Assembly (NCBI RefSeq): GCF_036588685.1
Contig: NC_086374.1
Span: 17,732,001-17,796,000 of the forward strand
Direction of reading: 5' to 3'
From: Mytilus trossulus
Lineage: Eukaryota
Length of the DNA stretch: 64,000 nucleotides
The notes beneath the pieces are model-generated. The model saw only the letters and a program-made list of their open reading frames with translations, was not told where the DNA came from and did not search any database. A program made the position numbers and the translations under genes. Positions 31,421 through 57,100 of the stretch are shown here, piece by piece; position 1 is the first letter of the stretch, and each line of letters begins with the position of its first letter.

Positions 31421-32756
31421 CTTTTTCGCTTTGTTTGTCTGAGTCTCCGTGACAATAGCTAATTAGCATAAATGGGCGGAGCATAACCCAATATGGGCGA
31501 TAGGTGAATTCAACGTTGAATGTTGGTTTATTCCTTAACGTTGAAAATGTTACGTTGTTTCAACGTTGAATATACGTTGATCACATTTCAACCTCATTTC
31601 AACGTTTATTAAACGTTGAGTGCCTGCTGGGGCGATTATGTCATAGTTTGGATAAGTTTGACATGACGGTGTATAGTGTTGTTTATGACAATCAATGCCA
31701 AAATGTAAACATTGGGATATTTGTAAAAAGAGCTTTTGACCATATTAGATTCAAGCTGGTAAGTATTTTTGTATATAGTTGAATGATATGTTAGTACATC
31801 AAAAGTTGTATCATATAGTGCCAAATCCTTTAACACAGAACAGCTTACGTATGTCAAAAAGTTGCTGTCTGGTTTCTCGTGCATAAAACATTATTATTCG
31901 CTTTCTGTCTGTCATATCACATATCTCTATATGTGATATAAAACTGACGTCAACTTTTTCGAAAAATACCTACTTTTGCGCACTATTCAAAATTACTCAA
32001 AAAACTGTGTCATGGTTTCGTTCATGATCGATCATGTTCGACATGATTCAGCCGGTTATGGGATTCTAGTCATGTATAATGGAGAATAACGACCAAAATA
32101 AACAAGTCATTTGAAACACAAAAGGACATATGAACGCACATACAATGTATTAAAGTCGATGCAATGAGACAACTATTCGCCCGAGATCAAATGACCTAGA
32201 TGTAAGCAACTATATGTCACCACAAAGCATTCAACAATGGGCAAAACCATACCTTTTAGCAAGTTATTAATTTTAAAAGGCTGCGACAAAATTAAATGTA
32301 GAAGAATTAAAATGAAAAAAGCAACAGCCTGATTTCTGTCCAAACAATACAAAACTAGAAAAAACGTTATCCTGAATATTCAAAATTAAATTTTGCTGTT
32401 TCCAGCAAAGCAAGCCAACAGTTTTGCCAAAATCAATTCTTTAAATTTCAATTCTTTATTTTTTCAATGATATTAACAATGTAGGCCTACCACTCCATAC
32501 ATAATACTAGATCTCAGGAGCTTTTTCAGATATTATCGAAACTTTATTGCATAAAAAGTAAAATATTTGAATAACACACCATGCATTTGGGTGTCGCATC
32601 GCTTGAGAAACGAAACTATATCACGCAATAAATAAATTAATAATACGCGTAAAAAGTGTACAACACAAAATTTAAAAAAAAGAAGGAAAAGGTTTTAAAA
32701 AATTTAAAAAAAAGAAGGAAAAGGTTTTAAAATTTTTTTTAAAAAGAAGGAAAAGC

Positions 32757-32851
32757 TGAAGACCTGTTGGTGACCTTCTGCTGTTGGTTTTTTTATTTGG
32801 TCGGGTTGTTGTCTCTTTGACACATTCCCCATTTCCATTCTCAATTTTATA
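32757..32851 (+). repeat. Isolated extreme 3' tip of the Naiad-type element seen at 38331 and 49401
   Basis: tgaagacctgttggtgaccttctgctg...cacattccccatttccattctcaattttat matches 39400-39490. Confidence 0.85.
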
Positions 32852-36179: not shown

Positions 36180-39100
36180 ATGGGAATCCGTTATAAATAT
36201 TCCGAAAGGACAACATATATTACTGTGTCTGTCTGTCTGATCCAGCTTATTGTTTTTATAGCAGTTACTGTAATTGAGAATCACAAACAGGATGTTTTAC
36301 AGACTAAGTTAGACATTAAAAAACAGAAAATAGCGAATATTTCAGCCAGATGTTTTAATTTGTCTCAGCTGAAGGTAAGTATATACTTCTACTTTCAAAT
36401 TGACAACAGACGAAATTTGTTTACGGCGAAATTGTTTTTTAATTTAATCTAATTTGGTGTTTAGAATCAAGATAAAGTGAACATGCCTGTCTAGATGCTA
36501 AAACAATAAACGCTGAGAGTTATTTAAACTATGTGTCGACGTAACATTTGGTAACTAAAATCCCTTCCCTTTTTCCCGAACGGATGACGAACCGAATCAG
36601 ACGGGAGTCCATGTGTGTCACAGTACAGCAGGATCTACTCACCCTTCCAGAGTATCTGATAACACCCAAATTGTTGGTTTGGTTCGTGTTGTTCAGTCTT
36701 TAGTTTTCTATATTGTGTTTTGTATACTATTGTTTGTATGGGTTTTTCTTCTTTTTTAACCATGTCGTTGGCAGTATATTTTCGACTCAGGCGTTTGGTA
36801 TCTTTTGCCTTTCTTTCAGTAAGGTATGTTTGTGCTTAAATCAACTTATGTAACAAGAGAAACAAAAACAAATATCGGGCGTACATTACATTCACATTTA
36901 GTTGCATTCATAAATTGAAATGAATACACGTATCAAAAAGAAAATTTGAGGAAATGTATTGACATCGTGTTGGTTTTTTCTTATATAGAAAAGCGGACTG
37001 AATCAAGAAGATGAATCCTTTGACTTAATTAGAAGACAGTTATCAAATAGTGAGAATGGTATAATACAGACACAGGTAAACATCAAGTGAATTTCAGGGG
37101 CGGATCCAGTCATTTAAAAAAGGGGAGTTCCAACCCCCGGAACCCTCCCCTGGATCCGCCACTGTATTTAGTTTACAAGAAAGGCTGTTGTGTAAATAAT
37201 TCAAGATCAAATTACAGTAAGACAATTTTGCATTAAGAGGTATAGACAGTGAACTTTGTACTGGAATAAGAATAAGAATAAGAATATTTTATTTCCAATT
37301 AAAGGGCCCTTTAAAGAGCTTTCATGTACTTGTTTGAATTTATGACTATTTTTATGTGAGCGTCACTGATGAGACTCATGTAGACGAAACGCCCGTCTGG
37401 CGTGTTAAATTATAAGCCTGGTACCTTTGATAACTATTGAATGTATCAACTTTGGTTTACATCATTTTTTCACGTAGTATTTTCTAAATGCCTTTGGCAT
37501 GTTAATAACGGTATAAATAAAAAGAAAGTGATTATGAAATACCAAAACCCTTGGAATATAGTTGGGATTTACTTTTTTTCTTATTATTATACCGAATTAT
37601 TTCTGATAACGAGTTCTGGCATGTTAACGTAAATGTCCCATGTTAGCAATCTATAGAGTGATTGCTTTTCTTTATAATTCATTCAAGATATTTAGAGATA
37701 TACACGTATACCTTCATTTGCCTGTTCAACCATTGAACTAGTTGTTTTTTAATTATATATGTTTTAAACCGGTAAAATTCTTTGATCTGCCAACAGCAAT
37801 GGTTTCATGTGTGTTTTTCTAATATTGTTAAAGACATTTAAAAAAAAGGGTATGATATAATTTATATATTTATATATTGATTTGAGAGTATAAGCCAAAA
37901 ACATTGTTTTTCAGGAACATTTACTCGAGAAGTCTTGTGCAAACGATACAAAAATATGCCTGAAAGGTAAATAAATCAATTCTTCTATTTAAATTTTTAT
38001 CTGATTTATTGGAAGACAGAAAGCATAACGTTAATGTAATGGCAATGAGAAAGTAGTACAAATCAGCAAGTGGTTAACATCATGCATGTATAGCAGTTTA
38101 ATATCGTGTCTGATATGTTACTGTTGTGTTTGTTTTCACGTAAATATTCTACATTAGCATGAAGTTAAAGATTTGCAGGCTATGTAAATAATACAACAAC
38201 CCAACAACTTCATGTTAACAGATGGTCACTATAAAATTGTCAGAATGCTGTTGTTTTCAATAAAATACGTGCCCCATATGTCCTGGTAAGTCAGTAGATT
38301 TACAGTTCTTGACTGAAGTAAACGCTTACATGACCACTGCCCTTTCCTAACGGAAAGCTGAATACTAAAATTTATGATAAAAGAGATGATTTTTCATTTC
38401 CTATCGTTAATTATCCATTTTTAGATGGTGACGTTCCCTTGTCACAATCTTACGGTGTTTATATATCTCAACTTGTACGCTCGTGTATGTAACAATGTTT
38501 TAGATTTTAACGAGAGAAATTTGTGTATTACTGAAAAATAATTACAACAGGGTTTTCTATATCACAAACTAGTCAAAACATTTACTAAATTTTATCATCG
38601 GTATAAGGACATCATTCGTAAATATAGCTCAACAAGCAGACTTCTTATACGTTCAGGTATTTCACATCCAATTTTTTATGGAAATATTCTTTATAAAGCA
38701 CAAAGGTGTCAGTATTCACCTCAGAAACTAACAAAACCTTTGAATAGACTTATTAAGAAGGGATATAGTTACGATACTGTTGTCAGGTCGTGAAAGATTG
38801 CATATGTTGGCGTTAATATTGATTCACTTATAGGGTCTTTGCATCGGAACTAAACACATTTATTCAAAAACAGTTGTTGGCATGACACGGGTTATGTACT
38901 TCTCATATATGTTATGATGGTATGATACTAAACCCCTAACGGTTAGGACTGTGCCTGATGTTCATATGATGAAGTCATAATCTTTCAGTCAGTTTAATTG
39001 AAATATGGAGCTGGCATGTCAGTTAACTGCTAGTAGTCTGTTGTTATTTATGTATTATTGTCATTTTGTTTATTTTCTTTGGTTACATCTTCTGACATCA

Positions 39101-42100
39101 GACTCGGACTTCTCTTGAACTGAATTTTATTGTGCGTATTGTTATGCGTTTACTTTTCTACATTGGCTAGAGGTATAGGGGGAGGGTTGAGATCTCACAA
39201 ACATATTTAACCCCGCCGCATTTTTGCGCCTGTCCCAAGTCAGGAGCCTCTGGCCTTTGTTAGTCTTGTATTAATTTTAATTTTAGTTTCTTGTGTACAA
39301 TTTAGAAATTAGTATGGCGTTCATTATCATTGAACTAGTATATATTTGTTTAGGGGCCAGCTGAAGGACGCCTCCGGGTGCGGGAATCTCTCGCTACATT
39401 GAAGACCTGTTGGTGACCTTCTGCTGTTGTTTTTTTCTATGGTCGGGTTGTTGTCTCTTTGACACATTCCCATTTCCATTCTCTATTTTAGCTCATACAT
39501 TAGATACACTTCTATAGCAAACGCGTAATATGCTCTGTATAATGAAACAAATAACTTGTTTTTTAACTACAGGTTTCAGCAGAATTGTGTGTATTGTGCA
39601 TGAACATGATACGATTGTAATATATGACTTTAAGGCTTCTGATTTTGTTACAGGGTTAAAAGGAGACATTGGCCTAGTCGGTGTTAAGGGTAAGATTACA
39701 CATTATCTTTGTCAAACGGACACATGTTACTTTTAAATGAGTTGTTTCGGCACTGTTCATTGTGTGGCTGTTCAAAATTATATCGGAGGAATAGACCAAT
39801 TTAAGGAGGCATTCTTTTCTATTTATGAAAATTAAGTGCCATGAACGGACTACTTCCAATTTGATAATTCTTTGGTTGGATATTGTTTTATTTGTTTCTC
39901 TGTTTATGTATGAAATGCTGATTGAGAGAATTAAGTGCGATTGTTTTTTTTAGGGTATATACAATTCCACCGTTCTGAATAAAAACGAACGAGTATTTCA
40001 AAAAATAGTTTAAAACTGTCACCTGTAAAATGTGCCTGTCCCAAATCAAGAACCTTGTAATTGTTGTTTCTTATTGTGTTTTCTTTCTTCTTTTTAAATG
40101 TTATTTTAATTATTTGTTGATTATGACATAACTTCGGTAGTCTCTGTCTAGTCTATGGGAGACTTAATGCTTGAATTATAGTATAGACACTAGTCTATAT
40201 TAATGACTTTATACGTATTGTGTGTTTTAGTAACTGTTTTAGTGATGTATATCCCACAACATTCACTCCTTTATATGTTCACAATTTTTATATCAACGGT
40301 CATTAAATATTGAGTTGTCTTATTATTTCGCATTTAATGGACTTTCATACCAATATTTTTCAACTATCTAATATAAGGTGACATCGGTAGTCAAGGAAAG
40401 CCTGGGTTGATAGGAAATATAGGAGTCATAGGTAACACTGGTCAAAAGGGGTTACCTGGAAAGCCTGGGCCTAAGGGTAGTCCGGGAGGGAAAGGTTCTA
40501 AAGGCGATGGAAGTGTCGATGGAATACGTGGTCTGAAAGGAAATATTGGAAATACAGGAGAGAACGGAAAATCCGGAATACGTGGATCGAGGGGACCAAA
40601 AGGTGTGCAAGGAACTAGTGGCAGAAAAGGACCATCAGGCCAAAAAGGTTTTCCTGGATCAAAAGGAAGTCTTGGGCATGTTGGGGATAATGGTAATCAT
40701 TTAAATTAATATAAGTGTTATTAAGAGGCTATGAATTTGCTGTTATAACAAAAAAAATTATAAGAAAAAAAGTGAAAGTTTGTTTGGAAAGATGTTTCAA
40801 TATAGTTTATATTTCATTAAATCGAAACTTTAAAAAATATTTTTCAAATATTCAGTAAACATTGATTGAATTTATTTTTAAAACGAAGATTAATAGAAAA
40901 CAAAATAGAATAATTGGCAAACCTTTAAAACGACTTTACTTCTTTGTTTTGAGGTAATATTGGAATCAAAGGTGAATTAGGAGAGACTGGTTCGAAGGGG
41001 ATTATGGCTAACATGTCTGAAACCTGTGATTGCATTCGTAAGTTTTGTATACTTCAAATGTTCGGGATATTTCAAACTTAACAATATTTTTTATCAATAT
41101 GTTTTGAATATTAAATACATTCATAGAAATATGAAATAGGAAGACAATAGGACGCGATGTAAATGACATTTTACTTGTTATTTAAAACAGGGAAAATGAA
41201 GTTTGTGGACAACACAACTGTTATAACAGCACCACTAGGAACCAATATCAAACTTAATTGTACAACAACACCACCACAAACGGTCAACTGGAAACACTCA
41301 AGTGACCAACCGTGTTATCCGTTAAATGACGGGAACGTTATCACAATCAACAAACTAAGTCCGGCAGATCTCGGTAAACACGTTTGTACAGTCAATAATG
41401 GATTCCGCAATATACAAAAAACTATATTTGTTAATTCAACAGGTGAGTTTTTATCAATATATATTATAGAGTACTACAATGCTTATTTAGAAAATATCTT
41501 CAAGTAAGCCCAGTATGTATCAAAACAGACAATAGATACCACGGCCTCTGGGTTAATTAAAAAAAGGCATATCGAAGAAATTTAAACAAACTACACATGA
41601 TCAAAATAAAAAAATAAACACTACACAACAAAAAGCCCTCTGAATAACCAAATAAAATTTAATTTGAAAATTGAATGCATCCAAAACATTGGCAAAACGA
41701 AGAGAAAATCCAATTTGCTGACAAGAATATCTTTCACCAGTAAATTGTTCTGTTTTGTTGGTCTGCTGAAATTCAGAAACGGTCACCTAGCCGGGGTATA
41801 TACTAAAAACCAAACAATTACATAAATCACCCTATCCATCATGACTTCGAATCTTTTTGTCATTTCATCCAACCGAAGTTAACTTGGATAATTCCTACTG
41901 ATTATCTGTAGTCCAACATTAATTTAATAAGTTTCTTAGGAAAAAATCACTCCCCTATCTTCTGAATAAAAATTGGAAAAACTAACTTTCTCACCGACGG
42001 TTCTGGAGGATTTTGAAGTATCCTTACTAGTATGAATAGATATATGAAAGACATAAAATCACAAAAATACCGAACTCCGAAAAATTCAAAACGGAAATTC

Positions 42101-45100
42101 TGCTGAAAATCAGATACGGTCACCTCGCTGGGGTATATACTAAAAACCAAACAATTACATAAATCACCCTATCCATCATGACTTCGAATCGTTTTGTCAT
42201 TTCATCCAATCGAAGTAAACCTGGATAATTCCTACTGATTATCTGTAGTCCAACTTTTATTTAATTAGTTATTAGGAAAAAATCACTCCCCTGTCTACTG
42301 AATAAAATTTGAAAAAAACTAACTTTTTCACTGACGGTTCTGGAGGATTTTGAAGTATCCTTACTAGTATGAATAGATATATGAAAGTTTTAAAATCACA
42401 AAAATACCGAACTCCGAAAAATTCAAAACGGAAATTCTGCAAAAAAATATCAACGGAAGATAAAACAACCTTATTTTATTTAAATTCTTTGTCATTCTAT
42501 GTTCTTAGATTCCGGTGATGGTATATCTTGCGACTTTGAAAATTCCAACTGCCATCTTAAATTGTACAAATGGCGTGTGGCTAATAATTCAGATGATCAT
42601 ACGAAGGGGTCACGTGAGTTTTATTATACAAAGAAAGTAAACATAGAAAATCATTTTAATCTGACCACTTCGACTGCCATTGATTCAATTCTGTTCATTC
42701 ATTTCGCGGTTTTTGAAAATATCCTTTCTATAAAGTCTATAAACATACTAGTGTTTGGTTGGTATTATTTTTTTGCTTTAAAAAGTGTATAACGAGATTT
42801 TAGTGAGAACATTAAAAATTCGGAAATTGTTTTGTAATTCAAGCTTAGCTGCGTCATCTATCTGATATCATTTTAATATTTGGTAAATGCTTATTTCGAT
42901 CGCTGCAAACAGATGGAAATTTTATAAGGTAAATAAATGCAAATTTTACCAGTTAAGCTAAATTTGTGATTAGAGACAAAGATAGATTCATTCATAAATT
43001 GGATATCAAGATATCAAGATGTCATTTAATTTCGAAGCAGCAGCATACATCACCCTTGATCAAAGTTTATCAATCAGTTTTGAATATCCATCCAAGAAAA
43101 AACACCTTAACTTAAAATAAGAAAAAAATATATATAAGAATTCCAGGCTAATCACAGCAATCTTTCTTTTGTTTGATGGTAGCATTGGTCACACATGTGT
43201 TTCTGAACACTTTTCTCTTTGATTATTTTCAAATCAAATGAATTTGCCGGTTTCGAAAATTAAGTTGCACAATAATTACTAAATTGACTGAATGTATTGA
43301 ATCAAATACAAACAAATTTCGACGTTTTTCGTTCTTAGGGTTTATTATTGTCTCAGTCATTTCTTATTTAAACACAGTCGGTATCATTCAGCGTAACCTT
43401 AAACAGTTTCCGTATAAGGTTCTACACCTTTGTAAATAATTAAGCTCGAAAATAAAACTGAAACTTTGACGTTCATATTTTACAGAGAAATCATATTCGA
43501 TAGTTTTGTAAGTGTTCAATACAACATGGGTTTTATAAGGGTTATCAACAGGATTAATTTGTTCTGTAGTACAAGTAATTTCAATGGATTATATGGAAAT
43601 ATCAGCAAACAGAATATTCATGGGGCTGTAGGCAAATATTTATTCACGAACCTCATATAGTTCTGTTTACCTCTTGTTACTCCAGTACATCACTAAACTT
43701 CTGGACTGAAACTAAACATTAACATCGTTGTAAATTGCAGAGAACGGTCATTTTGCTACCACGTATGATAACTCAACCTCGAGGATCGAGTCTCTATGGG
43801 TTAAAGTTGATGGTGAATCGTGCCTGACATTCTGGTATAGAAATGAGATTATTGGTAGTTCACCTGGTAGTACTATTGATATTACAACAAAAGTAAGTAA
43901 GTAGGTAGTAGTTTTCAGAATAGGAAAGTAGATACTAGTGAAAAAGTGAAACATGAATTGCAATTAATGTTAGAGTTATCCCATAACATGTCACCATCAC
44001 CGTGTCTGTGATCGATACAGTGTCTCAGGTGAAGTTACATTTTGACTCCGCAGATGTAGTTATTACCTGTTTTTTTCTCCATATAAATTATGTTGACACT
44101 ACTACTTCCTCTACTTTATTACTGGATATACCTTAAGAATCTCTATGACATAGAAAGATATGCTTTCCAATAATGTATCGTATGATTTTTATTTTTTTTT
44201 TTGGTTCGTCCATTTACATATTTATCTTATGACAACTGAACATTTGCAGATGAAATTAAAATAAATTACAAAAAAAAAACCCTGAACATTTGCGCTTAAA
44301 AAATAATGATACTTGGGTGTTTGTTAAATTTTGACAATTCTACAAACTACTTGTCTATTTAGCATATATCTTTAACTGTTATTTGTGTACAAACTACTTC
44401 TACAGGCAGTACCGACATTCCACTTAAAGATACAGAATAACTCGAAAAATTGCAATATTTTTTTTATATACAGGGAACTTCATGTCCTGGAAGGCAAACT
44501 TATGTTCACAAAACCATAAAGGATAATCAAGTAACTAATTGGACACAAGAGTTTATGCAACTACCAAATACATCTGATGTCATTCAGTTTGTATTTGACG
44601 TTCGCACTACTAATATGGTAGTTTCCATTGATGACATTAGCTTACTAAACGGAACTTGTCCTGCATGTAAGTAATCAACCTAATTAAGATAATGTAATTT
44701 ATCAACCTAATTAAGATACGTAATTTATCAACCTAATTAAGATATGTAATTTATCAACCTAATTAAGATACGTAATTTATCAACCTAATTAAGATATGTA
44801 ATTTATCAACCTAATAAAGATACGTAATTTATCAACCTAATTAAGATATGTAATTTATCAACCTACTTAAGATACGTAATTTATCAACCTAATTAAGATA
44901 CGTAATTTATCAACCTAATTAAGATACGTAAGTTATAAATCTAATTAAGATACGCAAGTTATCAACCTAATTAAGATACGCAATCTGTTGTCCTGGATTT
45001 ATATATTTTTGTATGCTCAAGTCCGGAAATATACTGGATATTTCCTGACGTTACTTTTACAATGGAAACATTAAATCAAAAAGATAATGGATCAGAGATC

Positions 45101-48100
45101 GAATATCCAACGCGGTTTGGATAACAGTTGTGTTTATCTCAACTTGATTAAAATCAGTATTACAAGTTATTGATTTAAGATCACGCTACATAATGTTAGG
45201 TAACTTATCACATATCGTCGCTGGGCTTACACAATGACTTTTTTATATATATATAAATGGTTTCACAGGCAAATCGGTCAGGCTGGAGGAAATCTTTGGT
45301 GTTCCATACAATCCTACATCTGGACAATTAAAACATAGGAAATATGTAAAAATATTTCGAAACTCAACTGTTTGTAATGTTTGCTTTCATCATGATGTAT
45401 GTACAATGAAGTGAGATTTTTATTGAAAAAAATAGCAATTTTCTGCATTTTAAAAGCCCTGCAACAATATATCAGTGCGATTCCTAAAAGACATCACTGT
45501 TTTTTTTTTTAAATCGTTCTTAATTTGACACAATCGTGTCTCAAATATCGTAGTTGTTGCATAGACAAGATTAAGTTTGACTCTGAGTCGTACCTTTGAT
45601 GGACAGATTGTCGTGCAACATAACTTTACGAAATCACTTCAATGAATAGTTTGAGTCAAAACTTAATTCGAAATATTCAATCATGAAAATTGTTACTAAT
45701 TCGAAATATTCAACCATGAAAATTGTTACTGTCAAATACTCAATTGACACTTAAATTTCGAGATAGTACTAGTATAATACAGTTTCCTTATAATTCAGTA
45801 TTCAAGTTCTACGAACCAGAAAATATAACCTTAACAATTCCACTCGATGGTCATGGCAATATCAATTGTTCGGCAGAGAAATCTGGTGATGTTCTATACA
45901 GTATGACGAAAATGGGCTCCTGTCAAAACCTTGCCAATACAGGAATACATACTATCCAAAAAGCTTCGTTCTCAGATGCAGGAACATATGTTTGCAAATT
46001 AATTAGTGATGGTGTTGTAAAGACAAAATTTGTTACTGTTGATATAACAGGTAAGAGTTCAAAATTTAATGAATTATATTAATTCTGATAGGAACAAAAA
46101 CAGCTGATTATAGAAATTTTGCTTCAAGCCACCATTGCTAAAAAGACTAGTAATATACATATACAATATACAATAGTAGTTAATCTGATCACATCGAGGA
46201 CTCCGATCCGAAATCAGCAGTTTTGGATCAGGATACTTGGTGTGCTAATGTTTACTTATATATGTTACAGTGAATTTGTATAATCAGGGATTATGTAGAA
46301 TCCCTTGATTTTTCAGGAAATATGTAGAATCACTAAAATCATTAGTAATTATATATAATCCCTGAAAATGACCAGTGATTTTACATAATCACTGAACATT
46401 TAAATAATTATTTTCTACAAATTCCCTAATATGATTTCAGGGATTATGAATAATTTAATGGTCTTTTGTTTGATAGGCATCTAAATGTAAAGAAAAACAG
46501 GCAGAACTTGAGATTGACAAATAGAACAAACTTTAAGAGGAAGCTTGCATATTCTCATAGTAATCAGACAGGATAAAAAAGAAAAGGGAAACCAAAAAGA
46601 TATAATGGCAAATTAAAAAAAAAAAGGTATAAAAATGGATATTGCCTGACCACAAAACAATGATATCTTTATCTTTCTTGCTCGAACCAGTTCAAGGTTG
46701 CAAATTCCCGTTCATTTATTTTTTCAATTTTTTTTTGTGGGGGGAGGGGGTGTACCTTCGTATGTTTTTACTGAACTTTTTATTTCTCTTAGGCATGTTG
46801 TTAAAATCTGATTCGATATGTGCAGGAAAAGGATTTTTAAAATTTGGATATTGTGGTAAAAACAGATGTGAAGCATATTATTTAGTATATTGTGTTTAAT
46901 ATTTTAATATAGTGTGCCTAACTTTAAAAAAAAATGGGTTTATCATTTTGATATGTTGTTACAATTTTTGTTACTTTATTATGATGTTTTTATGTGATTT
47001 TATAGAATAAATTATTTTTTTTTATTAACTTTCTTTATAAATACAACTTTTTCTTCATTTCAGTTATTATGTAATATCCCTGACGTTTTTTTAGCGATTA
47101 TACATAATCTCTGAAAATTTCAGGGATTCTACATATTCACTAAACTAGCTAGTGATTCTACATAATCCCTGAAAATTTCAGGGATTATACATAATCACTG
47201 ATTATACAAATTCACTGTAACATATATACCAACACATATCTATACATCCTCATGAACATCCATTTCAAATATGTGTTTATTTATATATTCGAGCTGTTAT
47301 AACACATCAAAACTTTTGTGATTTTAACTGAAAGATGTAAAAACAAAAATACTAGAAATACCAAACTTCGAGGAAAATTCAAAACGGAAAGTCCGAAATC
47401 AAAATGCATAATCAAATACTCAAACACATCAAACGAATGAATATCAACGGTCATTAAGTTAGCTAAGCCTCTCTCTTGTATGATAATCGTATAAAATTCT
47501 ATTATATTGACAACAACGTATGAACTAATAGGTAAACATGTCATAAATAGGGATAAAGCAGTCAACATAATTTGTGTTCTAATCTATTACAATAACTATA
47601 AAAACAAATATTTTTTTTCAACAAAGAAACACAAAAAAGACAAAGTGCATAAGCAAAAATGATTGACAATTCAAAATTGATCATTACACAACTTACACGA
47701 TGGTGGGATGTATACGTATTGAGCCACGTCATACGTATATAATTAATGTCAACGATGTCATCGTAGACTATTTTGTTTGTTCTATATGTTGTCTGATACT
47801 GTATAATTATACGTTATATCGGCGACATAACACTCGGTGACTACATGTTTTCCCTGTCTTATATCTTCAGATACTATAGTCGTTTGAAGTTTTAATATAT
47901 TCTATTGCTCAAATATGCAAAAGGGATGAGACAAAAGTTAATCAAACTTACATAGTCTTCTCTCAGAACTGTTATTTTACCGATCGCGTCCGATTGTAAT
48001 ATCTTAATTGAATGTGCATTTACTTAGACAGTAATACGGCGTACGATCTTGAATAACCTATACAGAAAATCAAATGTGTAGAAGCCAAATATTTAAAAAA

Positions 48101-51100
48101 AAAATGATAGCATCAAAATTAAAAAGGTCTTAATAGAGGCGTTAAAACAATCGACAATCAGTTTTTTAAATGGAGTTGCAACCATAGTTATAGTACAAGT
48201 AAATACATGTATCACAAACTGAAAATAATAGTAGAAATTATTAAATGCATCATACTTATTCCAAAGATTTCTTTCAAATAATACCACGAGAATATAATCA
48301 GTACATGATAATGTAAAAAAAATAGGGGCTTTCATCATAAATATCATGTCAGTAAAGTGCGGCTGAGGGAAATGACAGTTCGATGCCAAAGTCATGGAAT
48401 TCGTATAAATTTCATTCATAGGAATTTAATACAGACGTTTGTTGAATATGATGTATGTCAAAAGATAATATTGATGTTATTATGTATATAAAGGAAACAC
48501 AAATTGCACCTTTGAGAATGGCATATGTGACTGGACACAAGATCAGCAAGACAATCAAGACTGGGTATCAAGATCATCTACCACGCCATCTAGTGGTACC
48601 GGTCCAAATAGTGATCATACGTTTGGAGATTGTAAGTTCAATTTTGTACTCATCAAATATTCGAATATTTTAAATTGCCAATTAAGTATGCTGCAATTGA
48701 AATATTGCTTGTATTTCCTTATATTTTATTCAAGTCTAATGTATATTGTAAATGTACAATAGATCAAAAAACAATGTTATATTTACCGGATTTGTTATCA
48801 CATAAGCAACACGACGGGTGCCACATGTGGAGCAGGATCTGCTAGCCCCTTCTGGAGCACATGAGATCACCAATAATTTTTGGTAGGGGTTCGTGATGTT
48901 TAGTTTTTAGTTTTCTATGTTGTGTCATGTGTACTATTGTTTGTTTGTCTTTTTAATTTTTAGCCATGGCGTTGTCAGTTTATTTTAGATTTATGAGTTT
49001 GATTGTCCCTTTGGTATCTTTCGTCCCTCTTTTACAAATCTTTCAATTAAAGCATTTGTTGTTAATATTCTTAAAGCAGAGAAGAAACTTTATTTCTTCA
49101 TTTTGTAATGTTGATCAAGTTTTGATGATAATATGTTTGTAAACAATATTATTTGCGAATTAGTAGAGGATAAGAATATGTGTTGTTTGTTAAGTGGTTT
49201 ATAAACTAAATAATTCAATGATTTTATGACTTCTGACCAGCTGCATTAAGGGTTTTATAGTTGAAAGAAGATAACAAATCATAATTAAATACATTATAAG
49301 AGCCAGTAATAGAAACCAGAAATATTTTTGAGTACTTTATGGGATCAAATTAGAAATGTGAAAATATTTTAAAATATAATTGTACAACAATTAATAATTT
49401 ATGACAAAAGTAAGCAAATACCCATCGAAACAACATCTGATAAACAAATTCAATAATACTTTTAGAGATTTGGATGATATTTTGGCTCTCAATAATGACG
49501 ACTTCAGTATGTATACTAAAAAAAAAATTCCTGTTGAACCTACTTTAAATAAAGCTAATACTAACAATGACCACTGCCCTTTCCTCGATCTTGATATCTA
49601 TATCACAAACGGAAAGCTGAATACTAAGATTTATGTTAATTATCCGTTTTTAGATGGTGACGTTCCCTTGTCACCATCTTACGGTGTTTATATACCCAAC
49701 TTGTACGTTTCACTCGTGTATGTAACAATGTTTTAGATTTTAACGAGAGAAATTTATGCATTACTGAAAAATTATAATGAAAAGGTTTTCGATATCATAA
49801 ACTAGTCAAAACATTTACTAAATTTTATCATCGGTATAAGGACATCATTCGTAAATATAGCTCAACTCTGCTTACCCTTCCGGAGCACCTGAGATCACCC
49901 CTAGTTTTTGGTGGGGTTCGTGTTGTTTATTCTTTAGTTTTCTATGTTGTGTCATGTGTACTATTGTTTTTCTGTTTGTCTTTTTCATTTTTAGCCATGG
50001 CGTTGTCAGTTTGTTTTAGATTTACGAGTTTGACTGTCCCTTTGGTATCTTTCGTCCCTCTTTTTTCAACATGCAGACTTCTTATACGTTCAGGTATTTC
50101 ACATCCAATTTGTTATGGAAATATTCTTTATAAAGCACAAAGGTGTCAGTATTTACCTCAGAAACTAACAAAACCTTTGAATAGACTTATTAAGAAGGGA
50201 TACAGTAACGATACTGTTGTCAGGTCATTAAAGATTGCAAATTTTGGCGTTAATATTGATTCATTTATTTAGAGGGTATTTGCATCGGAACTAAACACAT
50301 TTATTCAAAAACCAGTTGTTGGCATGACACGGATTATGTTCTTCTCATATATGTTATGATGGTATGATACTAAACCCCTAACGGGAAGGATTGTGCCTGA
50401 TGTTCATATGATAAAATCATAATCTTTCAGTCAGTTTAATTGAAGTCTGGAGCTGGCATGTCAGTTAACTGCTAGTAGTCTGTTGTTATTTGTGTATTAT
50501 TGTCATTTTGTTTATTTTCTTTAGTTACATCTTCTGACATCAGACTCGGACTTCTTTTGAACTGAATTTTAATGTGCGTATTGTTATGTGTTTACTTTTC
50601 TACATTGGCTAGAGATATAGGGGGAGGGTTGGGATCTCACAAACATGTTTAACTCCGCCGCATTTTTGCGCCTGTCCCAAGTCAGGAGCCTCTGGCCTCT
50701 GTTAGTCTTGTATTTTTTTAATTTAAGTTTCTTGTGTACAATTTGGAAATTAGTATGGCGTTCATTATCACTGAACTAGTATATATTTGTTTAGGGGCCA
50801 GCTGAAGGACACCTCTGGGTGCGGGGATTTTTCGCTATACTGAAGACCTGTTGTGGACCTTCTGCTGTTGGTTTTTTTTCTATGGTCGGATTGTTGTCTC
50901 TTTGACACATTCCCCATTTCCATGCTTAATTTTATGTTACTGATGGCAATGATGATTCATTATTTTATTGAGAATATTCAACTGTGAATTCAATTTAAAG
51001 ATAAATATATTTATAAGTATAAAGTATAAATTGAAAACAACGTTCAGACCTATGATTGCGCATTGTTTATACGTGTGGATGTGAAACCACATTCGTTGTA

Positions 51101-54100
51101 GAGGGGTCTAAATACAGCACAAACAACATTTTCTAAAAGAACAAAAAAGTAAAAAAAGAATATTTTTACAAAACGCCTTTGACTAACAGGACGTAAAACT
51201 GATGTTCCTAAAACCTGTTGACTGCCATTGACTATTGTCAAAAAATTGATCACAAGATGTAACAAGATGGATCCCTATATTAGTTTAAGTTTAATATGTA
51301 TATATATATATATATATACAACTCGTCTAAACATCAACCCAACAATGTTAGATCTGTAAATTTGCTTTCGCAAATTTTTTGGTTCTTCCCTTGCCGGGAT
51401 TCGAACCCATGCTACTGTGATATCGTGACACCAAATCGCCTGCACTGCAGCCGTCCCGCTAGACCACACGACCACCTGGGCTCTCATTAAAAGAGCTTTC
51501 GGTGGCCATATGTTACCTTTCCACGTCAGTTTTAATCTAGCGGCGTACTACAGAACATGATATATAAGGCATGAAGATGTTATTTTTACAGATCAGCTAA
51601 ATTATCTATAGTAAAGGATCCTACAAATTAATGTAAGATACAGTCACAGAAAATAATTATATTCATAAGTACGTCTGAGTCAGTGACAACCCTACAACAG
51701 ATGTATCCATCGGATCGCCATCAATGATGGTGATACATGGCTGTGTACATAATGTATATACAACTCGTCTAAACATCAACCCAACAATGTTAGATCTGTA
51801 AATTTGCTTTCGCAAATTTTTTGGTTCTTCCCTTGCCGGGATTCGAACCCATGCTACTGTGATATCGTGACACCAAATCGCCTGCACTGCAGCCGTCCCG
51901 CTAGACCACACGACCACCTGGGCTCTCATTAAAAGAGCTTTCGGTGGCCATATGTTACCTTTCCACGTCAGTTTTAATCTAGCGGCGTACTACAGAACAT
52001 GATATATAAGGCATGAAGATGTTATTTTTACAGATCAGCTAAATTATCTATAGTAAAGGATCCTACAAATTAATGTAAGATACAGTCACAGAAAATAATT
52101 ATATTCATAAGTACGTCTGAGTCAGTGACAACCCTACAACAGATGTATCCATCGGATCGCCATCAATGATGGTGATACATGGCTGTGTACATAATGTATA
52201 TACAACTCGTCTAAACATCAACCCAACAATGTTAGATCTGTAAATTTGCTTTCGCAAATTTTTTGGTTCTTCCCTTGCCGGGATTCGAACCCATGCTACT
52301 GTGATATCGTGACACCAAATCGCCTGCCAGAATCCTCAGAATCATAGAATATTTTGGTAACAAGGATTAAGAGGTCTGACTCGGAGGAATAAATCAGAAT
52401 TCCGCATTTTAAAAAGAAGAGTTCATGGATTCCAAAACCTAGTAAATCTGCTACACTGGAAGATGTTATCGACAAAATCAAATTGGATGTTGTTCATCTA
52501 GCTAGCAACAAGTACTCGTCATTTTATAACACCTCTCCTGACGAGAAAAATGCCATACAATCGTTGAGAAACCGAGATGATATTGTGATAAAACCAGTAG
52601 ACAAGGGCAGTGCCGTTGTTATAATGGAAAAAGCTAACTGCATCGCGGAAGCAGTGCGTCAGCTCTCTGATGAGAGATTTTATAAGAAGCTAGACTATGA
52701 CCCTACTTCCGAGTTTAGTTCCAAAATCATCAATGCATTACAAACCATGTACGATGACGGTCACATAGATGAGGATACAATTGGTTATTTCAAACCAGAG
52801 AATGCCAAGCCTGGTCGATTGTATCTTCTCCCCCTAAACCCAAACAACCCTGCTAGACCATTTGTATCCGCAAACGGCCATCCGACTGAGAAAATTTCGG
52901 AATTCGTCGATTTTCATTTACGATCTCATGTAGAAAATCTTCCTTCCCACATTCAAAACACTACAGATTACCTTCGTAAAATGGAATCCATGAACCCTCT
53001 TCCTCCGGAAACCCTCCTTGTCACTTTAGATGTCACTTCATTGTATATCAACATACCTCATGATGACGGCTTACAATCTGGTAGGAAAATATGGGACTCT
53101 CGAAACATTTTAGAACCATCTACTGAATGTTTAGCCCAGCTGCTGACTTTGGTCCTGAAATGCAACAATTTCACCTTTAACGGTGAGCATTACCTTCAAA
53201 TAAACGTGACAGCGATGGGGACGAAAATGGCACCGTCTTACGCCAATATTTTCATGGGCAGATTCGAAAAACAAATTATTGCAGCATCTTTATCCAAACC
53301 TTTGTCTTGGTTCCGTTTCATTGATGATGTTGACATGAAATGGATTGAATCACAACAAAAACTGGATGATTTCATCAAACCTGCAAACAACGCCCACCTT
53401 TCAATTAAATTTACGTATGCAATTTCCGACTCTAAAATATCTTTCTTAGACACAACCACATCTATATAGGATGGTGTCATACCAACAGACCTCTATTGTA
53501 AACCCACAGATAAACATCAGTACCTTTCTCCTCAACGCTGTCATCCCAAACACTGTACAAAAAGTATCCCGTACAGTCAAGCTCTCAGAGTAAAGCGGAT
53601 TTGCTCCTCTGAGGAAGCTGTCACGAAACGGTTACAGGAACTTTGAGGATTTATGACAAAACGAGGTTATAAGAAATTGGACATAGATAAGGGGTTTGCG
53701 CGCGCTAAATATACCAGCCGCCATGACCTCTTACAGTACAAACGTAAGAGGCGCAGCGAAATAGTCCCGTTTGTTCGAACATACAATCCAGTCTTTACTA
53801 ACCTTTCACGTTTGATCCGTGCCAACTGTCAAACTATTGCTAAACACCCTAAATTATCCAAGATCTTTCCCAATCCTCCTGTCTTAGCTTTTCTGAGACC
53901 GGCAAGTCTGAAAGACTTATTTGTAAGAGCTGACGTCTCTTGAAATAAAAGCTGTTCAATTTCAGGATGGTGCAAGTCACGTGGTAACAGACGTTGTCTG
54001 ACTTGTCAACAAATACTAAATACTCAAACATTTACCTGCTACTCGACTGGGTCTGTGTACACTATATTTTGCAATGTAACTTGCAAAACCCAGAGTGTTG

Positions 54101-57100
54101 TATACCTCCTTCAGTGTCGATGTGGCATGCAGTATGTTGGCGAGACTGAGCAGCCATTCAACAAACGCATGAATGGTCATCGAAGTGACTACACTTGCAA
54201 CCCAGCCCTACCCATAAGTCGTCATTTGAGATCACCTAGTCACACACAAGCTGATCTCAAAAACCTTACCATCGCAATCATAGACCACAACGAGGGTTGG
54301 TCAAAGGTCGACAGAGTCACTTGGGAAGGATTTTGGATAAGAAAGTTACGGACAGTTTCCCCAGAGGGCATAACTGAAAAAACATAGAATGAGTCACTTA
54401 TTTTCCTGTTATCACTTGTTTCCAGTAACTCTGGCTTCAGTACTAACTTTACAGTTCGATTTTTTTAAATACCAGTTTAAATTACAGGGCTCCATTCATT
54501 CGGGATGGATGTATAAGTACGTAACCACGTTCAATTTTTTTCCCTCATCAGATAAAACTTATTTTTCTAATCATTATTAAACTGCTATACGTTTGGGAGG
54601 CTTACATATATAGTTTATGTTGCAATTGCCCTACCGTTGTCAAATTTGTAATATTATACCAACTTGGATCGGTAAGGACATTTTTTATTTTTTTTGTTTG
54701 AGGACTGCCCTCCATGCAGTTATAACATCTAAACTGTCACAACCTTTGGAAATTTAGAGTTGTGTCAGTTCACATCGCTAACAACTATTTTCATTTGGAA
54801 ATTTTAAAATTGTACCAGCGTCTGTGAATTGTATAAATTTCAAGATTTGGAAAAAGTTTCTTAGTTTGAATATATTGACATGATTCATTTGACATCTTGC
54901 TATTATTGAAGAAGGATATCGGTTTTCCGAAATATCTAATATTTGTTCATTTTATAGTTATTTAATGGTGATGTTGTACCCTTTTTGACTTGTTATATAT
55001 TATATTTTGTAGTGTACAGAATCATATTACATGATCCATCCCTCTGTAAGATTAATCGTTGACTATTTATTCAGTCATTTTATATTATTATATTATGTAT
55101 ATATTATTTCTTTCTTATAATGAAAACAAAAAGTAAAAAACACCGTATTTTCATAGTTTTGAAATAGCATTAAGCTGACAGATTGTAATGTTTATAAGAT
55201 TAAATGTCTAAAAATCGATCATTTAAATCGTCTTAACTGATCAACTGATCATTTTATCGGGACCTGCAAAACTTACTGATCTTCGGAAATATATGTTGAA
55301 TGAATCAAGATTTAATAGATAGAATAAAAACATTCAAATAAAGAAACAGTCTGTATGACGTCGCTAAGTGCAAACTTTATAGAACGTATGGATTTTAAGT
55401 GTAACTTCAGTGTTGATATGACTGTCTTTTATTTGTAAATTTCAGCAACAGGACATTATATGTATTTTGAGGCTTCTGGTGGAAGTCAACATGACACGTC
55501 AGTTCTCAAGTCACCCATGTTATCCACCGGACCCTACTGTCTTTCTATGGCTTACAATATGAATGGAGATAGTATAGGGGCACTTAATGTTTATACAAAG
55601 GTCAGTTCTCAAGTCACCCATGTTATCCACCGGACCCTATTGTCTTTCTATGGCTTACAATATGAATGGAGATAGTATAGGGGCACTTAACGTTTATACA
55701 AAGGTCAGTTCTCAAGTCACCCATGTTATCCACCGGACCCTATTGTCTTTCTATGGCTTACAATATGAATGGAGATAGTATAGGGGCACTTAACGTTTAA
55801 ACAAAGGTCAGTTCTCAAAGTCACCCATGTTATCCACCGGACCCTACTGTCTTTCTATGGCTTACAATATGAATGGAGATATTATAGGGGCACTTAACGT
55901 TTCTACAAAGGTAATAAAAAAATGATAAAGTTTAAGTATTATATGATTTGAATATCACTGTGATCTGAATTCATATCGCATCGGCATGTTTTTGTATTAC
56001 ATTTTAGCTATATTACCCAGTGTATAAGCGTATGCTGCCTTGCGAAAAAAGGAATATTTAACATTTGAATCTTCCGAGCATCCTTTTTGGTAAATATATT
56101 GAAAAAAATTTAAATAACACTTTTGGACAGCAAACGTCATTCTGTTTGCACTATAAGAAGAGCTCTCCAATTTAAAGTCAAATTTGTAAACGAAAATACT
56201 CATTGCTCAAAAAGTGAAATAATGTGAAAAAATCAATAAAATGTCATTTTTAGCTGCAACAATCTAAAGAAAAAAATGTTTAATTTGAAAAAGTGAAATC
56301 TAATTTAGAAAATTCCTTTAATATCTAAATAAATTGCGTCTTCTGATAAGAAAATTAAGTGAAATGTGCAAGATAGACCTTAAAATTAGAGACAGATGAA
56401 AACTTGTCGAATTGTTTTTACATAGTATTTAATCAAAACAAAATATTTCAGGAGTGTAATAGCACTGTGCGCAATAAAATCTGGTCGGTTGCAGGAAATA
56501 AAGGTGAAAACTGGTTTGATGGATGTATAAAAACACCTGTTCTGTCACAGGACTATCAAATATATATAGAGGCAGAAAGAGGCTCCACTTATGCCAGTGA
56601 TATTGCTATAGATGACGTTAACATACAAGCCGGTAATTGTATCTGTTCCAGTAAAACTGTTGGTAGGTTCCTGGAATCTGGGTCTGTATTGCACTTGTGA
56701 TGTTCTCTCTTATTGTATAATCTGATCATAGATGTAATATATCTATGATCTGACAAGAAATTGAAGTAAATATATGTCATTGCAAAACAATTCTAACCAT
56801 TGCGAAAAGGGTCGTTCCGGTACGCATCTGGCATGTAAGCAAATAAAACTTAGTAATCAAGAAATCGACTTGTTTACCACTATTTTTATGATCCATATTA
56901 ATAATAATATTCTATTTCATACGACACTATATATGATACTGATACTATACGGACTGCACGGGAATATGATACTGATGATATACATGATCCCGGCGATGTT
57001 TGTTGATGTTAACCAAACATATCTATACTATTAAACGAATAGACCTCATTTTGTGTGTCGCTTCTCTTCTTTCCACAATAGAGTAGTCATCATGCCTCTG

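What the first reader, a model, noticed from the sequence alone, without database searches (positions are those of the whole stretch)
38851..39490. Penelope-like retroelement 3' UTR built as a chain of four RNA devices: SECIS, pseudoknot, twister ribozyme, unknown fold
Seen: after the RT stop, both copies (38851-39490 and ~50290-50935) show the same order of structured modules separated by U-rich spacers. Known: Naiad-clade PLEs have a C-terminal RT, can be selenoproteins with a 3' SECIS, and PLE pseudo-LTRs normally carry hammerheads. Inference: this family uses a twister instead of a hammerhead and couples UGA recoding, self-cleavage and possibly RNA end protection in one ~600-nt cassette. 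I do not know of a description of this combination. This is the best candidate for an undescribed system in the window.
Basis: partly seen in the sequence, partly recalled or inferred. Interest (0 to 1): 0.88.

Follow-up and report, generated by a model that had tools for sequence, protein, structure and literature searches.

The report
Twister and SECIS in Naiad retroelement tail
The stretch is the 3' tail of a dead copy of a very abundant Naiad-type Penelope-like retroelement. Besides a selenocysteine-insertion hairpin, the tail carries a rearranged twister self-cleaving-ribozyme fold, which matters because Naiads were described as lacking the hammerhead ribozyme found in other Penelope-like elements.

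Summary
Window 38851-39490 is the last 640 nt of a 5'-truncated Naiad Penelope-like element. There are thousands of copies at 95-98% identity with a shared 3' end.

Three of the four claimed RNA modules hold up:
- **SECIS (38904-38968).** It keeps AUGA/AAA/GA and covaries across families. A relative scores 42 bits, above the Rfam cut-off. Longer copies have roughly 1000-codon frames interrupted only by TGA, at conserved Cys positions.
- **Type-P5 twister fold (39165-39255).** It has P2-P5, both pseudoknots and the catalytic nucleotides. It lies downstream of Naiad reverse transcriptases (RTs) that are 42-97% identical. 15 of 22 pairs show compensatory changes, including pseudoknot T1. It is below the Rfam cut-off (23 bits) and lacks P1, which is replaced by two covarying palindromes. 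That suggests it acts as a dimer.
- **3'-terminal hairpins (39358-39426, 39452-39464).** These covary too.

The claimed pseudoknot has no support. SECIS and twister are not obligately coupled: one lineage has the twister but no TGA or SECIS.

Self-cleavage is untested.

Selenoprotein Naiads are published. I found no paper describing a twister in a Penelope-like element. Earlier notes of this scan had already flagged the same fold elsewhere in this genome.

The parts
38330..38853 (+). Copy 1: decayed C-terminal remnant of the Naiad reverse transcriptase, ending at stop TAA 38851-38853
   Evidence: Translation. Homology extents. An RT frame free of internal stops in longer copies. The TGA at 38791-38793 is TTA (Leu) in copy 2 and other copies, so it is decay and not a Sec codon.
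38898..38975 (+). SECIS element (Rfam core 38904-38968): helix I, AUGA/GA quartet, 10-bp helix II, apical CUAAA and mini-stem
   Evidence: SECIS_1 scores 21.7 bits here. Homologous sites in other families score 22.7, 28.4, 33.0 and 42.1 bits. Alifold gives 24 pairs, 11 of them compensatory, with AUGA, AAA and GA invariant. MFE z is -2.08.
38976..39164 (+). U-rich spacer (the claimed 'pseudoknot' region); no supported structure
   Evidence: MFE z-score is -0.88, and 34 of 200 shuffles fold at least as well. Its length is not conserved between families.
39165..39255 (+). Type-P5-like twister fold. Elements in order: P5 39165-39174 / 39246-39255; AUA; P2 39178-39181 / 39211-39214; GAGGG 39182-39186; palindrome 1 39188-39197; palindrome 2 39199-39208 (mutated in this copy); UAA 39208-39210, with predicted cleavage between 39208 and 39209; GC 39215-39216 (T2); P3 39217-39228; P4 39229-39232 / 39241-39244; loop UCCCAAGU 39233-39240 (T1 and T2 partners).
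   Evidence: Twister-P5 RF02684 scores 23.1 bits, E 0.0038 in a 151-nt search. The core pattern has 9888 genomic matches against 0 for the reversed control. Covariation on 13 distinct sequences: 96.7% of cells paired and 15 of 22 pairs compensatory, including T1. Module table. Coordinates.
39358..39426 (+). Long bipartite hairpin of the 3' terminal domain; probably the RT recognition / priming structure (inferred)
   Evidence: Alifold and pair counts over five families: 91.3% paired against 33-48% for slid controls, and 11 pairs with compensatory change. MFE of 39259-39490 has z -2.58.
39452..39464 (+). Small conserved hairpin UGUC-N5-GACA, followed by the element's 3' end at 39490
   Evidence: All 4 pairs are kept in all families. 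Copies share a common 3' end.
49567..50934 (+). Copy 2 of the same family. RT remnant with a 204-nt foreign insertion at 49867-50065; stop at 50292-50294; SECIS about 50346-50410; twister fold 50607-50697; small hairpin 50895-50907; 3' end 50934.
32756..32850 (+). Copy 3: a 95-nt fragment holding only the extreme 3' tail, next to a short tandem repeat

Best explanation
The stretch is the 3' untranslated tail of a 5'-truncated, dead copy of a young, very abundant Naiad-type Penelope-like retroelement. Its single ORF (N-terminal GIY-YIG endonuclease, C-terminal RT) is a selenoprotein gene. The tail holds three conserved RNA structures.

1. **SECIS.** It lies about 50 nt after the stop and recodes the 4-5 in-frame UGA codons of the ORF, which sit at zinc-finger, CxC and DKA cysteine positions, as selenocysteine.

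2. **Circularly permuted (type-P5) twister fold.** It has P2, P3, P4 and P5, both pseudoknots (T1, T2) and the catalytic G-A and U-A-A nucleotides. The P1 helix next to the scissile bond is replaced by two short self-complementary tracts. The most likely working (inferred, not shown) is as follows. The RNA self-cleaves between U39208 and A39209. It does so efficiently only when two copies pair through the palindromes, either as two RNAs or as two units of a tandem transcript. This is the same logic as the dimeric minimal hammerheads of other Penelope-like elements. It would process more-than-unit transcripts while sparing monomeric templates.

3. **Terminal hairpin pair at the extreme 3' end.** It is probably the site the element's RT recognises to start target-primed reverse transcription.

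Shown: the element's identity, the SECIS and UGA pattern, the twister fold and its conservation under selection, and the terminal hairpins. Inferred: catalysis, the dependence on dimers, and the role of the hairpins.
For: **Element.**
- Constant 3' end and variable 5' ends across copies at 95-98% identity.
- GIY-YIG, CxC, DKA and RT motifs are present. They match the Naiad description in Craig et al. 2021, PMC8557442.

**Selenocysteine.**
- Frames of 1003-1012 codons are interrupted only by TGA in L083, L096 and L082. All in-frame stops are TGA and the frame ends in TAA.
- The same TGA positions occur in copies 8% apart and in a lineage with 48% RT identity.
- These positions are Cys in L112, which has no TGA.
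- A SECIS hit lies between the stop and the twister in every Sec family, up to 42.1 bits against a cut-off of 35. Helix II covaries.

**Twister.**
- Rfam Twister-P5 alignment matches GAGGG, UAA, GC and GUCCCAAG.
- The 10-bp P5 and the P3 hairpin sit exactly where the class allows them.
- The core pattern has 9888 matches against 0 for the control.
- The compensatory T1 variant GAAGG/UCCUAAG has 3752 matches against 2 for the control. The two other single compensatory variants give only 51 and 46.
- The fold lies 150-720 nt after the stop of Naiad RTs that are 42-97% identical, and it is the best-conserved block of otherwise about 60% identical UTRs.
- 96.7% of cells pair against 27-42% for slid controls. 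15 of 22 pairs are compensatory, including T1 (G-C, A-U, U-A), which was not part of the model used for alignment.

**Palindromes.**
- Both tracts stay self-complementary while changing sequence: GAGAUCUC, GGGAUCCC, GAGCGCUC and UGG(GC/AU/UA)CCA for the first; AACAUGUU, AACCGGUU, AACUAGUU and AAACGUUU for the second.
- RNAcofold favours homodimers by 8-16 kcal/mol.

**Precedents.**
- Dimeric palindrome-bearing hammerheads in PLEs, PMC4209133.
- Active twister variants in Perere-3 and residual cleavage without P1, PMC8501958.
Against: - No twister or SECIS match in the window reaches Rfam's gathering score.
- The canonical P1 is absent. A twister without P1 is reported to cleave only inefficiently.
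- Genomic copies are not enriched for 5' ends at the predicted cleavage site: 7 hits, against 10 and 6 at two control positions. Cleaved RNAs have therefore left no visible footprint as templates.
- A nested-only MFE prefers an alternative helix that sequesters GGG and UAA.
- The two-palindrome dimer does not rebuild a canonical P1 topology.
- The junction before P2 is AUA in this family rather than the usual AAA.
Confidence: 0.7

Rival explanations
1. The twister-shaped fold is conserved but not catalytic in these elements. It would serve as a structured RNA dimerisation, packaging or RT-binding signal, with the palindromes acting like a retroviral dimer-initiation site. It would descend from, or converge on, a twister scaffold.
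For: - P1 is missing, and two covarying palindromes dominate the linker.
- There is no excess of copy 5' ends at the cleavage site.
- Cleavage inside the 3' UTR would cut the ORF off from the 3' priming end, which is awkward for a template RNA.
Against: - The nucleotides needed for catalysis rather than for folding (the G-A of GAGGG and the A-A after the scissile bond) are invariant in every lineage down to 42% RT identity. Paired positions covary freely in the same sequences.
- Other PLEs carry true ribozymes in the equivalent place, also with palindromes.
Confidence: 0.2
2. The ribozyme is an active but selfish passenger, or a relic, that rides in Naiad tails without serving the element. Craig et al. 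raised this possibility for hammerheads in PLEs.
For: Craig et al. note that lacking hammerheads does not hinder Naiad proliferation. No twister was detected downstream of the more distant Naiad-like RT in L116.
Against: - The fold sits at the same relative position in lineages with 42-97% RT identity, with compensatory changes.
- It is the best-conserved block of the UTR.
- It is retained in families with thousands of recent copies.
Confidence: 0.06
3. The modules belong to an unrelated insertion (for example a SINE) in the tail, or the twister and SECIS matches are chance resemblances.
For: Rfam scores in the window are below the cut-off.
Against: - All 40 best genomic copies hold the 640 nt contiguously behind the RT.
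- The A and B tails align collinearly end to end.
- The same module order follows RTs of eight lineages.
- Reversed-pattern controls give 0-2 matches against thousands.
Confidence: 0.02

Closest known systems
Twister ribozyme, type P5 permutation (Rfam RF02684, clan CL00120; Roth et al. 2014)
   Same: - The order of elements is the same: P5, A-rich junction, P2, GAGGG, (P1 position), UAA, P2, GC, P3, P4 with loop UCCCAAG(C/U), P5.
- Both pseudoknots are present.
- The conserved nucleotides are present.
   Different: - There is no P1 helix. A 20-22-nt linker with two self-complementary tracts stands in its place.
- The Rfam score is 23 bits against a cut-off of 37.6.
- The junction is AUA in family A.
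- The T2 pair is G-U in most families.
[quoted passage not shown] 2021, PMC8501958)
   Same: A twister-class ribozyme built into an abundant retrotransposon. P1 is unconventional, and even the UUGG after GAGGG recurs.
   Different: - Those are type P1, sit at the 5' end of a LINE, and define the RNA 5' end next to the target-site duplication. They were shown to cleave.
- This one is type-P5-like, sits about 280 nt from the 3' end of a Penelope-like element, has palindromes in place of P1, and is untested.
Minimal dimeric hammerheads in the pseudo-LTRs of Penelope-like elements (Cervera & de la Pena 2014, PMC4209133; Lunse et al. 2017)
   Same: - The host is the same kind of element, and the ribozyme sits in the same region, the repeated tail.
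- The helix next to the cleavage site is reduced and replaced by palindromic sequence. This implies activity as a dimer in tandem transcripts.
   Different: - It is a different ribozyme class (twister, not hammerhead).
- There are two separate palindromes rather than one.
- Naiads were reported to lack canonical hammerheads.
Selenoprotein-encoding Naiads of clams and spiders (Craig et al. 2021, PMC8557442)
   Same: - There are 3-5 in-frame UGA codons at the CCHH and CX2-5CxxC zinc-finger cysteines and at the DKA-motif cysteine.
- The SECIS lies just downstream of the stop.
   Different: - This case is in a mussel-like genome, spread over several families, with an extra UGA at the CxC motif in some.
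- That paper reports no ribozyme.

Membership tests
Twister ribozyme (CL00120) | Helices P2 and P4 plus pseudoknots T1 and T2 | tested here: met
   All are paired in every lineage. T1 shows G-C, A-U and U-A; T2 shows G-U, A-U and G-C.
Twister ribozyme (CL00120) | Conserved nucleotides: U-A-A at the cleavage site, GC, GUCCCAAG loop, GAGGG | tested here: met
   See the Rfam alignment and alignment A6. Variation occurs only at covarying T1/T2 positions and at N-1, which is C in L112 and L121.
Twister ribozyme (CL00120) | P1 helix flanking the scissile bond | tested here: not met
   No complementarity exists between the tract after GAGGG and the tract before UAA. Two palindromes stand there instead.
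Twister ribozyme (CL00120) | Score at or above the Rfam gathering threshold | tested here: not met
   23.1 bits against 37.6 for RF02684. There is no match at gathering score in the window.
Twister ribozyme (CL00120) | Site-specific self-cleavage giving 2',3'-cyclic phosphate and 5'-OH ends | not testable with these tools
The indirect test on copy 5' ends was negative.
Eukaryotic SECIS (RF00031) | AUGA ... AA ... GA core with helix I, a helix II of about 10 bp and an apical loop | tested here: met
   AUGA, CUAAA and GA are invariant, and 8 of 10 helix II pairs covary.
Eukaryotic SECIS (RF00031) | Location in the 3' UTR of an mRNA with in-frame UGA at Cys-equivalent positions | tested here: met
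Eukaryotic SECIS (RF00031) | Score at or above the Rfam gathering threshold | tested here: inconclusive
   The window copy scores 21.7 bits, below the cut-off of 35. Homologous sites in other lineages score 28.4, 33.0 and 42.1 bits; the last is over the cut-off.
Naiad clade of Penelope-like elements | N-terminal GIY-YIG endonuclease with CX2-5CxxC and CCHH fingers, a CxC linker motif, DKA instead of DKG, and a C-terminal RT | tested here: met
   Motifs were read in L034, L083, L108 and L112 and compared with the description in PMC8557442. Pfam gives only a weak RVT_1 match, E 0.014.
Naiad clade of Penelope-like elements | Partial tandem / pseudo-LTR arrangement and 5'-truncated copies | tested here: met
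   Copies are 5'-truncated. L108 and L110 hold tandem units 3838 nt apart. No tandem arrangement is seen in the window itself.
Naiad clade of Penelope-like elements | Phylogenetic placement of the RT within Naiads | not tested
   No reference Naiad sequences were available, because the paper's supplements are not held.

The most novel reading that the evidence does not exclude
Naiad Penelope-like elements, described as having no ribozyme, in fact carry a twister in the place of the hammerhead. This twister would be the first of its class gated by dimerisation: P1 is replaced by two self-complementary tracts, so cleavage happens only when two units pair. That would process tandem transcripts into unit-length, possibly circular, templates. 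Hammerhead-bearing and twister-bearing PLEs would then have converged on the same regulatory trick.
Probability: 0.4. Interest if true: 0.88.

Novelty: new variant of a known kind. Interest (0 to 1): 0.78.

Why it matters
- **An open point in the Naiad paper.** Craig et al. (2021) left open how Naiads, the dominant retroelements of bivalve genomes, do without the hammerhead that all other endonuclease-bearing PLEs carry. A conserved twister fold in the same part of the element offers a direct, testable answer.
- **Reach of the twister class.** It would extend twister ribozymes to a second retrotransposon class, after Perere-3 LINEs.
- **A new natural design.** P1 replaced by covarying palindromes points to dimer-dependent cleavage. 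That is of interest both for ribozyme mechanism and for circular-RNA models of PLE replication.
- **Selenoprotein-encoding transposons.** The finding adds several mussel-type families to the few selenoprotein-encoding transposons known. It also shows that Sec coding and the ribozyme are separable.
- **Annotation.** Thousands of these SECIS- and ribozyme-bearing tails lie scattered in and near genes.

Tried and rejected
**Searches that gave nothing or little**
- Rfam at gathering score over the whole window: nothing.
- Rfam Twister-P5 over the whole genome: only 79 of 26,711 candidates were scored, with a best score of 24.9 bits. This was uninformative.
- 'Pseudoknot' module: the spacer folds like shuffles, so I dropped it.
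- T1 compensatory variants GAGGA/UUCCAAG and GAGAG/UCUCAAG: 51 and 46 matches, mostly decayed copies rather than families.
- Pfam on ORF pieces: nothing at E 0.01, and only RVT_1 at E 0.014.
- PDB sequence search: nothing.
- Protein homologue search: more than 3400 relatives, almost all unnamed.
- Supplements of Craig et al. are not held, so I could not search the published Naiad consensus sequences for the motif.
- Literature searches for twister together with Naiad, PLE or selenocysteine found no report.

**Footprint of cleaved templates**
- I counted copies whose 5' end falls exactly at U^AA. There were 7, against 10 and 6 at two control positions. There is no enrichment, and some of these hits look like internal deletions.

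Flanks of family C therefore came from metagenome contigs instead.

**Other points**
- The MAFFT alignment A2 misplaced family C by one column and was not used for counts.
- The chance or foreign-insertion explanation was rejected.


Full report
**What is at the coordinates.** The window is AT-rich (about 32% G+C) and comes from a 1.30-Gb assembly. Positions 38330-39490 and about 49567-50934 are two copies of one repeat, 92-94% identical and collinear. Copy 2 carries a 204-nt foreign insertion. A third 95-nt fragment of the extreme tail lies at 32756-32850. Translation shows the decayed C-terminus of a reverse transcriptase (RT) ending at TAA 38851-38853, so the finding starts exactly at the stop codon.

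In the whole genome the 640-nt stretch has more than 3450 candidate places. The 40 scored are 95-96% identical over the full length. Copies share the same 3' end and differ in where they start. That is the signature of target-primed reverse transcription with 5' truncation. The 640 nt are therefore the true tail of the element and not a local composite.

**Which element.** Longer copies show one frame with these features:
- an N-terminal GIY-YIG region with CX4CxxC and CCHH-type fingers;
- a CxC motif;
- a PADKAANN motif;
- a C-terminal RT with WLPKLHK and YLDD.

This is the architecture, including DKA in place of DKG, that Craig et al. 2021 (PMC8557442) define for Naiad Penelope-like elements. 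Pfam sees only a weak RVT_1 match. More than 3400 mostly unnamed relatives exist in public data.

**Selenocysteine and the SECIS.**
- In L034, and in L043 which is 8% diverged, the frame is interrupted at identical places by TGA.
- Metagenome-derived copies have frames of 1003-1012 codons free of TAA and TAG. They hold four (family A) or five (family C) TGA codons and end in TAA.
- A lineage with only 48% RT identity (L108-L110) has TGA at the same motifs.
- In L112, which has no TGA at all, those positions are cysteine.
- Rfam's SECIS_1 model matches 38904-38968 at 21.7 bits, below the cut-off of 35.
- The homologous sites score 22.7 (family B), 28.4 (C), 33.0 (D) and 42.1 bits (L108, over the cut-off). 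Each lies between the RT stop and the twister.
- Across families AUGA, CUAAA and GA are invariant, while 11 of 24 pairs show compensatory change.

I take the SECIS as real. Selenoprotein Naiads with a SECIS just after the stop are published for two clams and two spiders, so this part is a new member of a known kind. The TGA at 38791-38793 in copy 1 is TTA in other copies, so it is decay.

**The twister fold.** In a narrow search Rfam's Twister-P5 model matches 39178-39244 at 23.1 bits (cut-off 37.6; E 0.0038). It aligns GAGGG, UAA, GC and GUCCCAAG. Two features that the model does not score fit the class as well:
- a 10-bp P5 (39165-39174 with 39246-39255);
- a P3 hairpin (39217-39228).

An exact pattern of the core occurs 9888 times in the genome, against 0 for the reversed control.

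Earlier notes of this scan spoke of compensatory pseudoknot changes, so I tested the three single compensatory variants of T1. GAAGG with UCCUAAG gives 3752 matches against 2 for the control, a third family. The other two variants give 51 and 46, mostly decayed copies.

A pattern scan of metagenome contigs and a protein-guided scan of genome assemblies brought in further lineages. In the second scan, Naiad contigs turn up as contaminants in bacterial bins. In every case the fold lies 150-720 nt after the stop of a Naiad RT, and these RTs are 42-97% identical to family A. The A and B tails are only about 60% identical overall, and the 86-nt core is their best-conserved block.

I aligned the lineages with a covariance model that knew only the nested helices. 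On that alignment:
- 96.7% of cells pair, against 27-42% when partners are slid;
- 15 of 22 pairs show compensatory change, against 2-6 in slid controls;
- T1 shows G-C, A-U and U-A; T2 shows G-U, A-U and G-C.

The G-A of GAGGG and the A-A after the scissile bond never vary. The fold is therefore a twister relative kept by selection.

**The missing P1 and the palindromes.** No lineage has complementarity between the tract after GAGGG and the tract before UAA. The 20-22-nt linker instead holds two self-complementary tracts whose sequences change while staying palindromic:

| Lineage | Palindrome 1 | Palindrome 2 |
|---|---|---|
| A | UGAGAUCUCA | AAACAUGUUU |
| B | GGGAUCCC | AACAUGUU |
| C | UGG(GC/AU/UA)CCA | AAACGUUU |
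| D | UGAGCGCUCA | AACCGGUU |
| E | UGGGAUCCCA | AAACUAGUUU |
| L108 | GGGCCC | AACCGGUU |

The central four bases also remain self-complementary. A hairpin would not require that, and the second tract could not form a hairpin at all. Pairing between two copies is therefore the simplest reading. RNAcofold favours homodimers by 8-16 kcal/mol.

The parallel is the minimal hammerhead of other PLEs. Its helix next to the cleavage site is reduced to a palindrome, and it cleaves only as a dimer in tandem transcripts (PMC4209133). Twister variants with unconventional P1 are active in Perere-3 LINEs, and cleavage without P1 is reported as inefficient (PMC8501958).

**What is not shown.** Cleavage itself is untested. 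I looked for a genomic footprint instead. Copies whose 5' end falls exactly at the predicted bond number 7, against 10 and 6 at two control positions, so there is no enrichment. This neither supports cleavage nor excludes it, because cleaved 3' fragments need not serve as templates. A cut inside the 3' UTR would separate the ORF from the priming end. That argues for regulated, for example dimer-dependent, cleavage, or for the circular-template model proposed for PLEs. A non-catalytic dimerisation or packaging role remains a serious rival.

**The other modules.**
- The spacer 38969-39165 folds no better than shuffles (z -0.88). Its length varies between families. I found nothing to support a pseudoknot there.
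- The terminal domain is structured (z -2.58) and homologous across families. It has a long bipartite hairpin (39358-39426) and a small UGUC-N5-GACA hairpin (39452-39464). On these, 91.3% of cells pair against 33-48% when slid, and 11 pairs are compensatory.
- Their position at the invariant 3' end suggests the RT recognition and priming site. That is an inference.

**Coupling.** SECIS and twister co-occur in families A, B, C and D and in L108. L112 has the twister 150 nt after the stop of a frame with no TGA and no SECIS hit. The two devices are independent tenants of the tail and not one cassette. No twister was detected after the more distant RT of L116, but weak folds would have been missed.

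**Novelty.** Craig et al. state that Naiads lack canonical hammerheads, and they mention no twister. Full-text searches combining twister with Naiad, Penelope-like, PLEs or selenocysteine found no report. The library is incomplete, so this is absence of evidence only. Earlier AI notes of this scan had already flagged the same fold in other windows of this genome. I re-tested their claims here rather than relying on them. I file the finding as a new variant of a known kind: a twister-class fold with P1 replaced by palindromes, in a new host element.

**Limits.**
- The organisms behind the metagenome and contaminant contigs are not known.

Noticed in passing
L038:1483-1542 (minus strand; G000:C7 about 26314545-26314595): A near-canonical type-P1 twister with P1 present scores 55.5 bits against RF03160 (cut-off 67.2, E 1.4e-10). 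It has no Naiad RT within 1.5 kb and is followed by a roughly 20-nt tandem repeat. A weaker one (30.5 bits) sits in L037 next to a truncated family-C tail. The genome therefore holds twisters in at least one other context.
   Followed up: partly
L108-L121 (genome contigs): Naiad retroelement contigs are filed inside bacterial or archaeal assemblies. Examples are a 2-kb contig under Paenibacillus tengchongensis (L111), and bins of SUP05 and Thiodubiliella mussel symbionts (L112, L118, L121). These are eukaryotic host or sample contamination.
   Followed up: partly
L112:169-3228 and 3379-3491: This Naiad has a 1019-codon frame without any TGA and with Cys at the positions that are Sec elsewhere. 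It has no SECIS hit, yet it carries the twister fold 150 nt after the stop, with T1 changed to GGU/ACC and C instead of U before the scissile bond.
   Followed up: yes
L108:624-686 and 4462-4524; 910-1046 and 4748-4884: SECIS-plus-twister units lie 3838 nt apart, in the head-to-tail (pseudo-LTR) arrangement typical of PLEs. The SECIS scores 42.1 bits and appears to overlap the end of the frame.
   Followed up: partly
window 49867-50065, 36634-36782, 48872-49033: A short T-rich repeat of about 150-200 nt is inserted in the RT remnant of copy 2 and is present twice more in the window. It may be the tail of another retroelement family.
   Followed up: no
window 44640-45036; 55498-55922; 51310-52327: Three tandem arrays with units of 26 nt (about 15 copies), 103 nt (4 copies) and 442 nt (3 copies, 99-100% identical).
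   Followed up: no
window 46248-46367 and 47118-47237: A 120-nt inverted repeat, 83% complementary, with arms 750 nt apart. It may be a foldback or MITE-like element.
   Followed up: no
window 38791-38793: The in-frame TGA near the end of the RT remnant of copy 1 is TTA (Leu) in copy 2 and in other copies. It is a decay mutation, not one of the family's Sec codons.
   Followed up: yes
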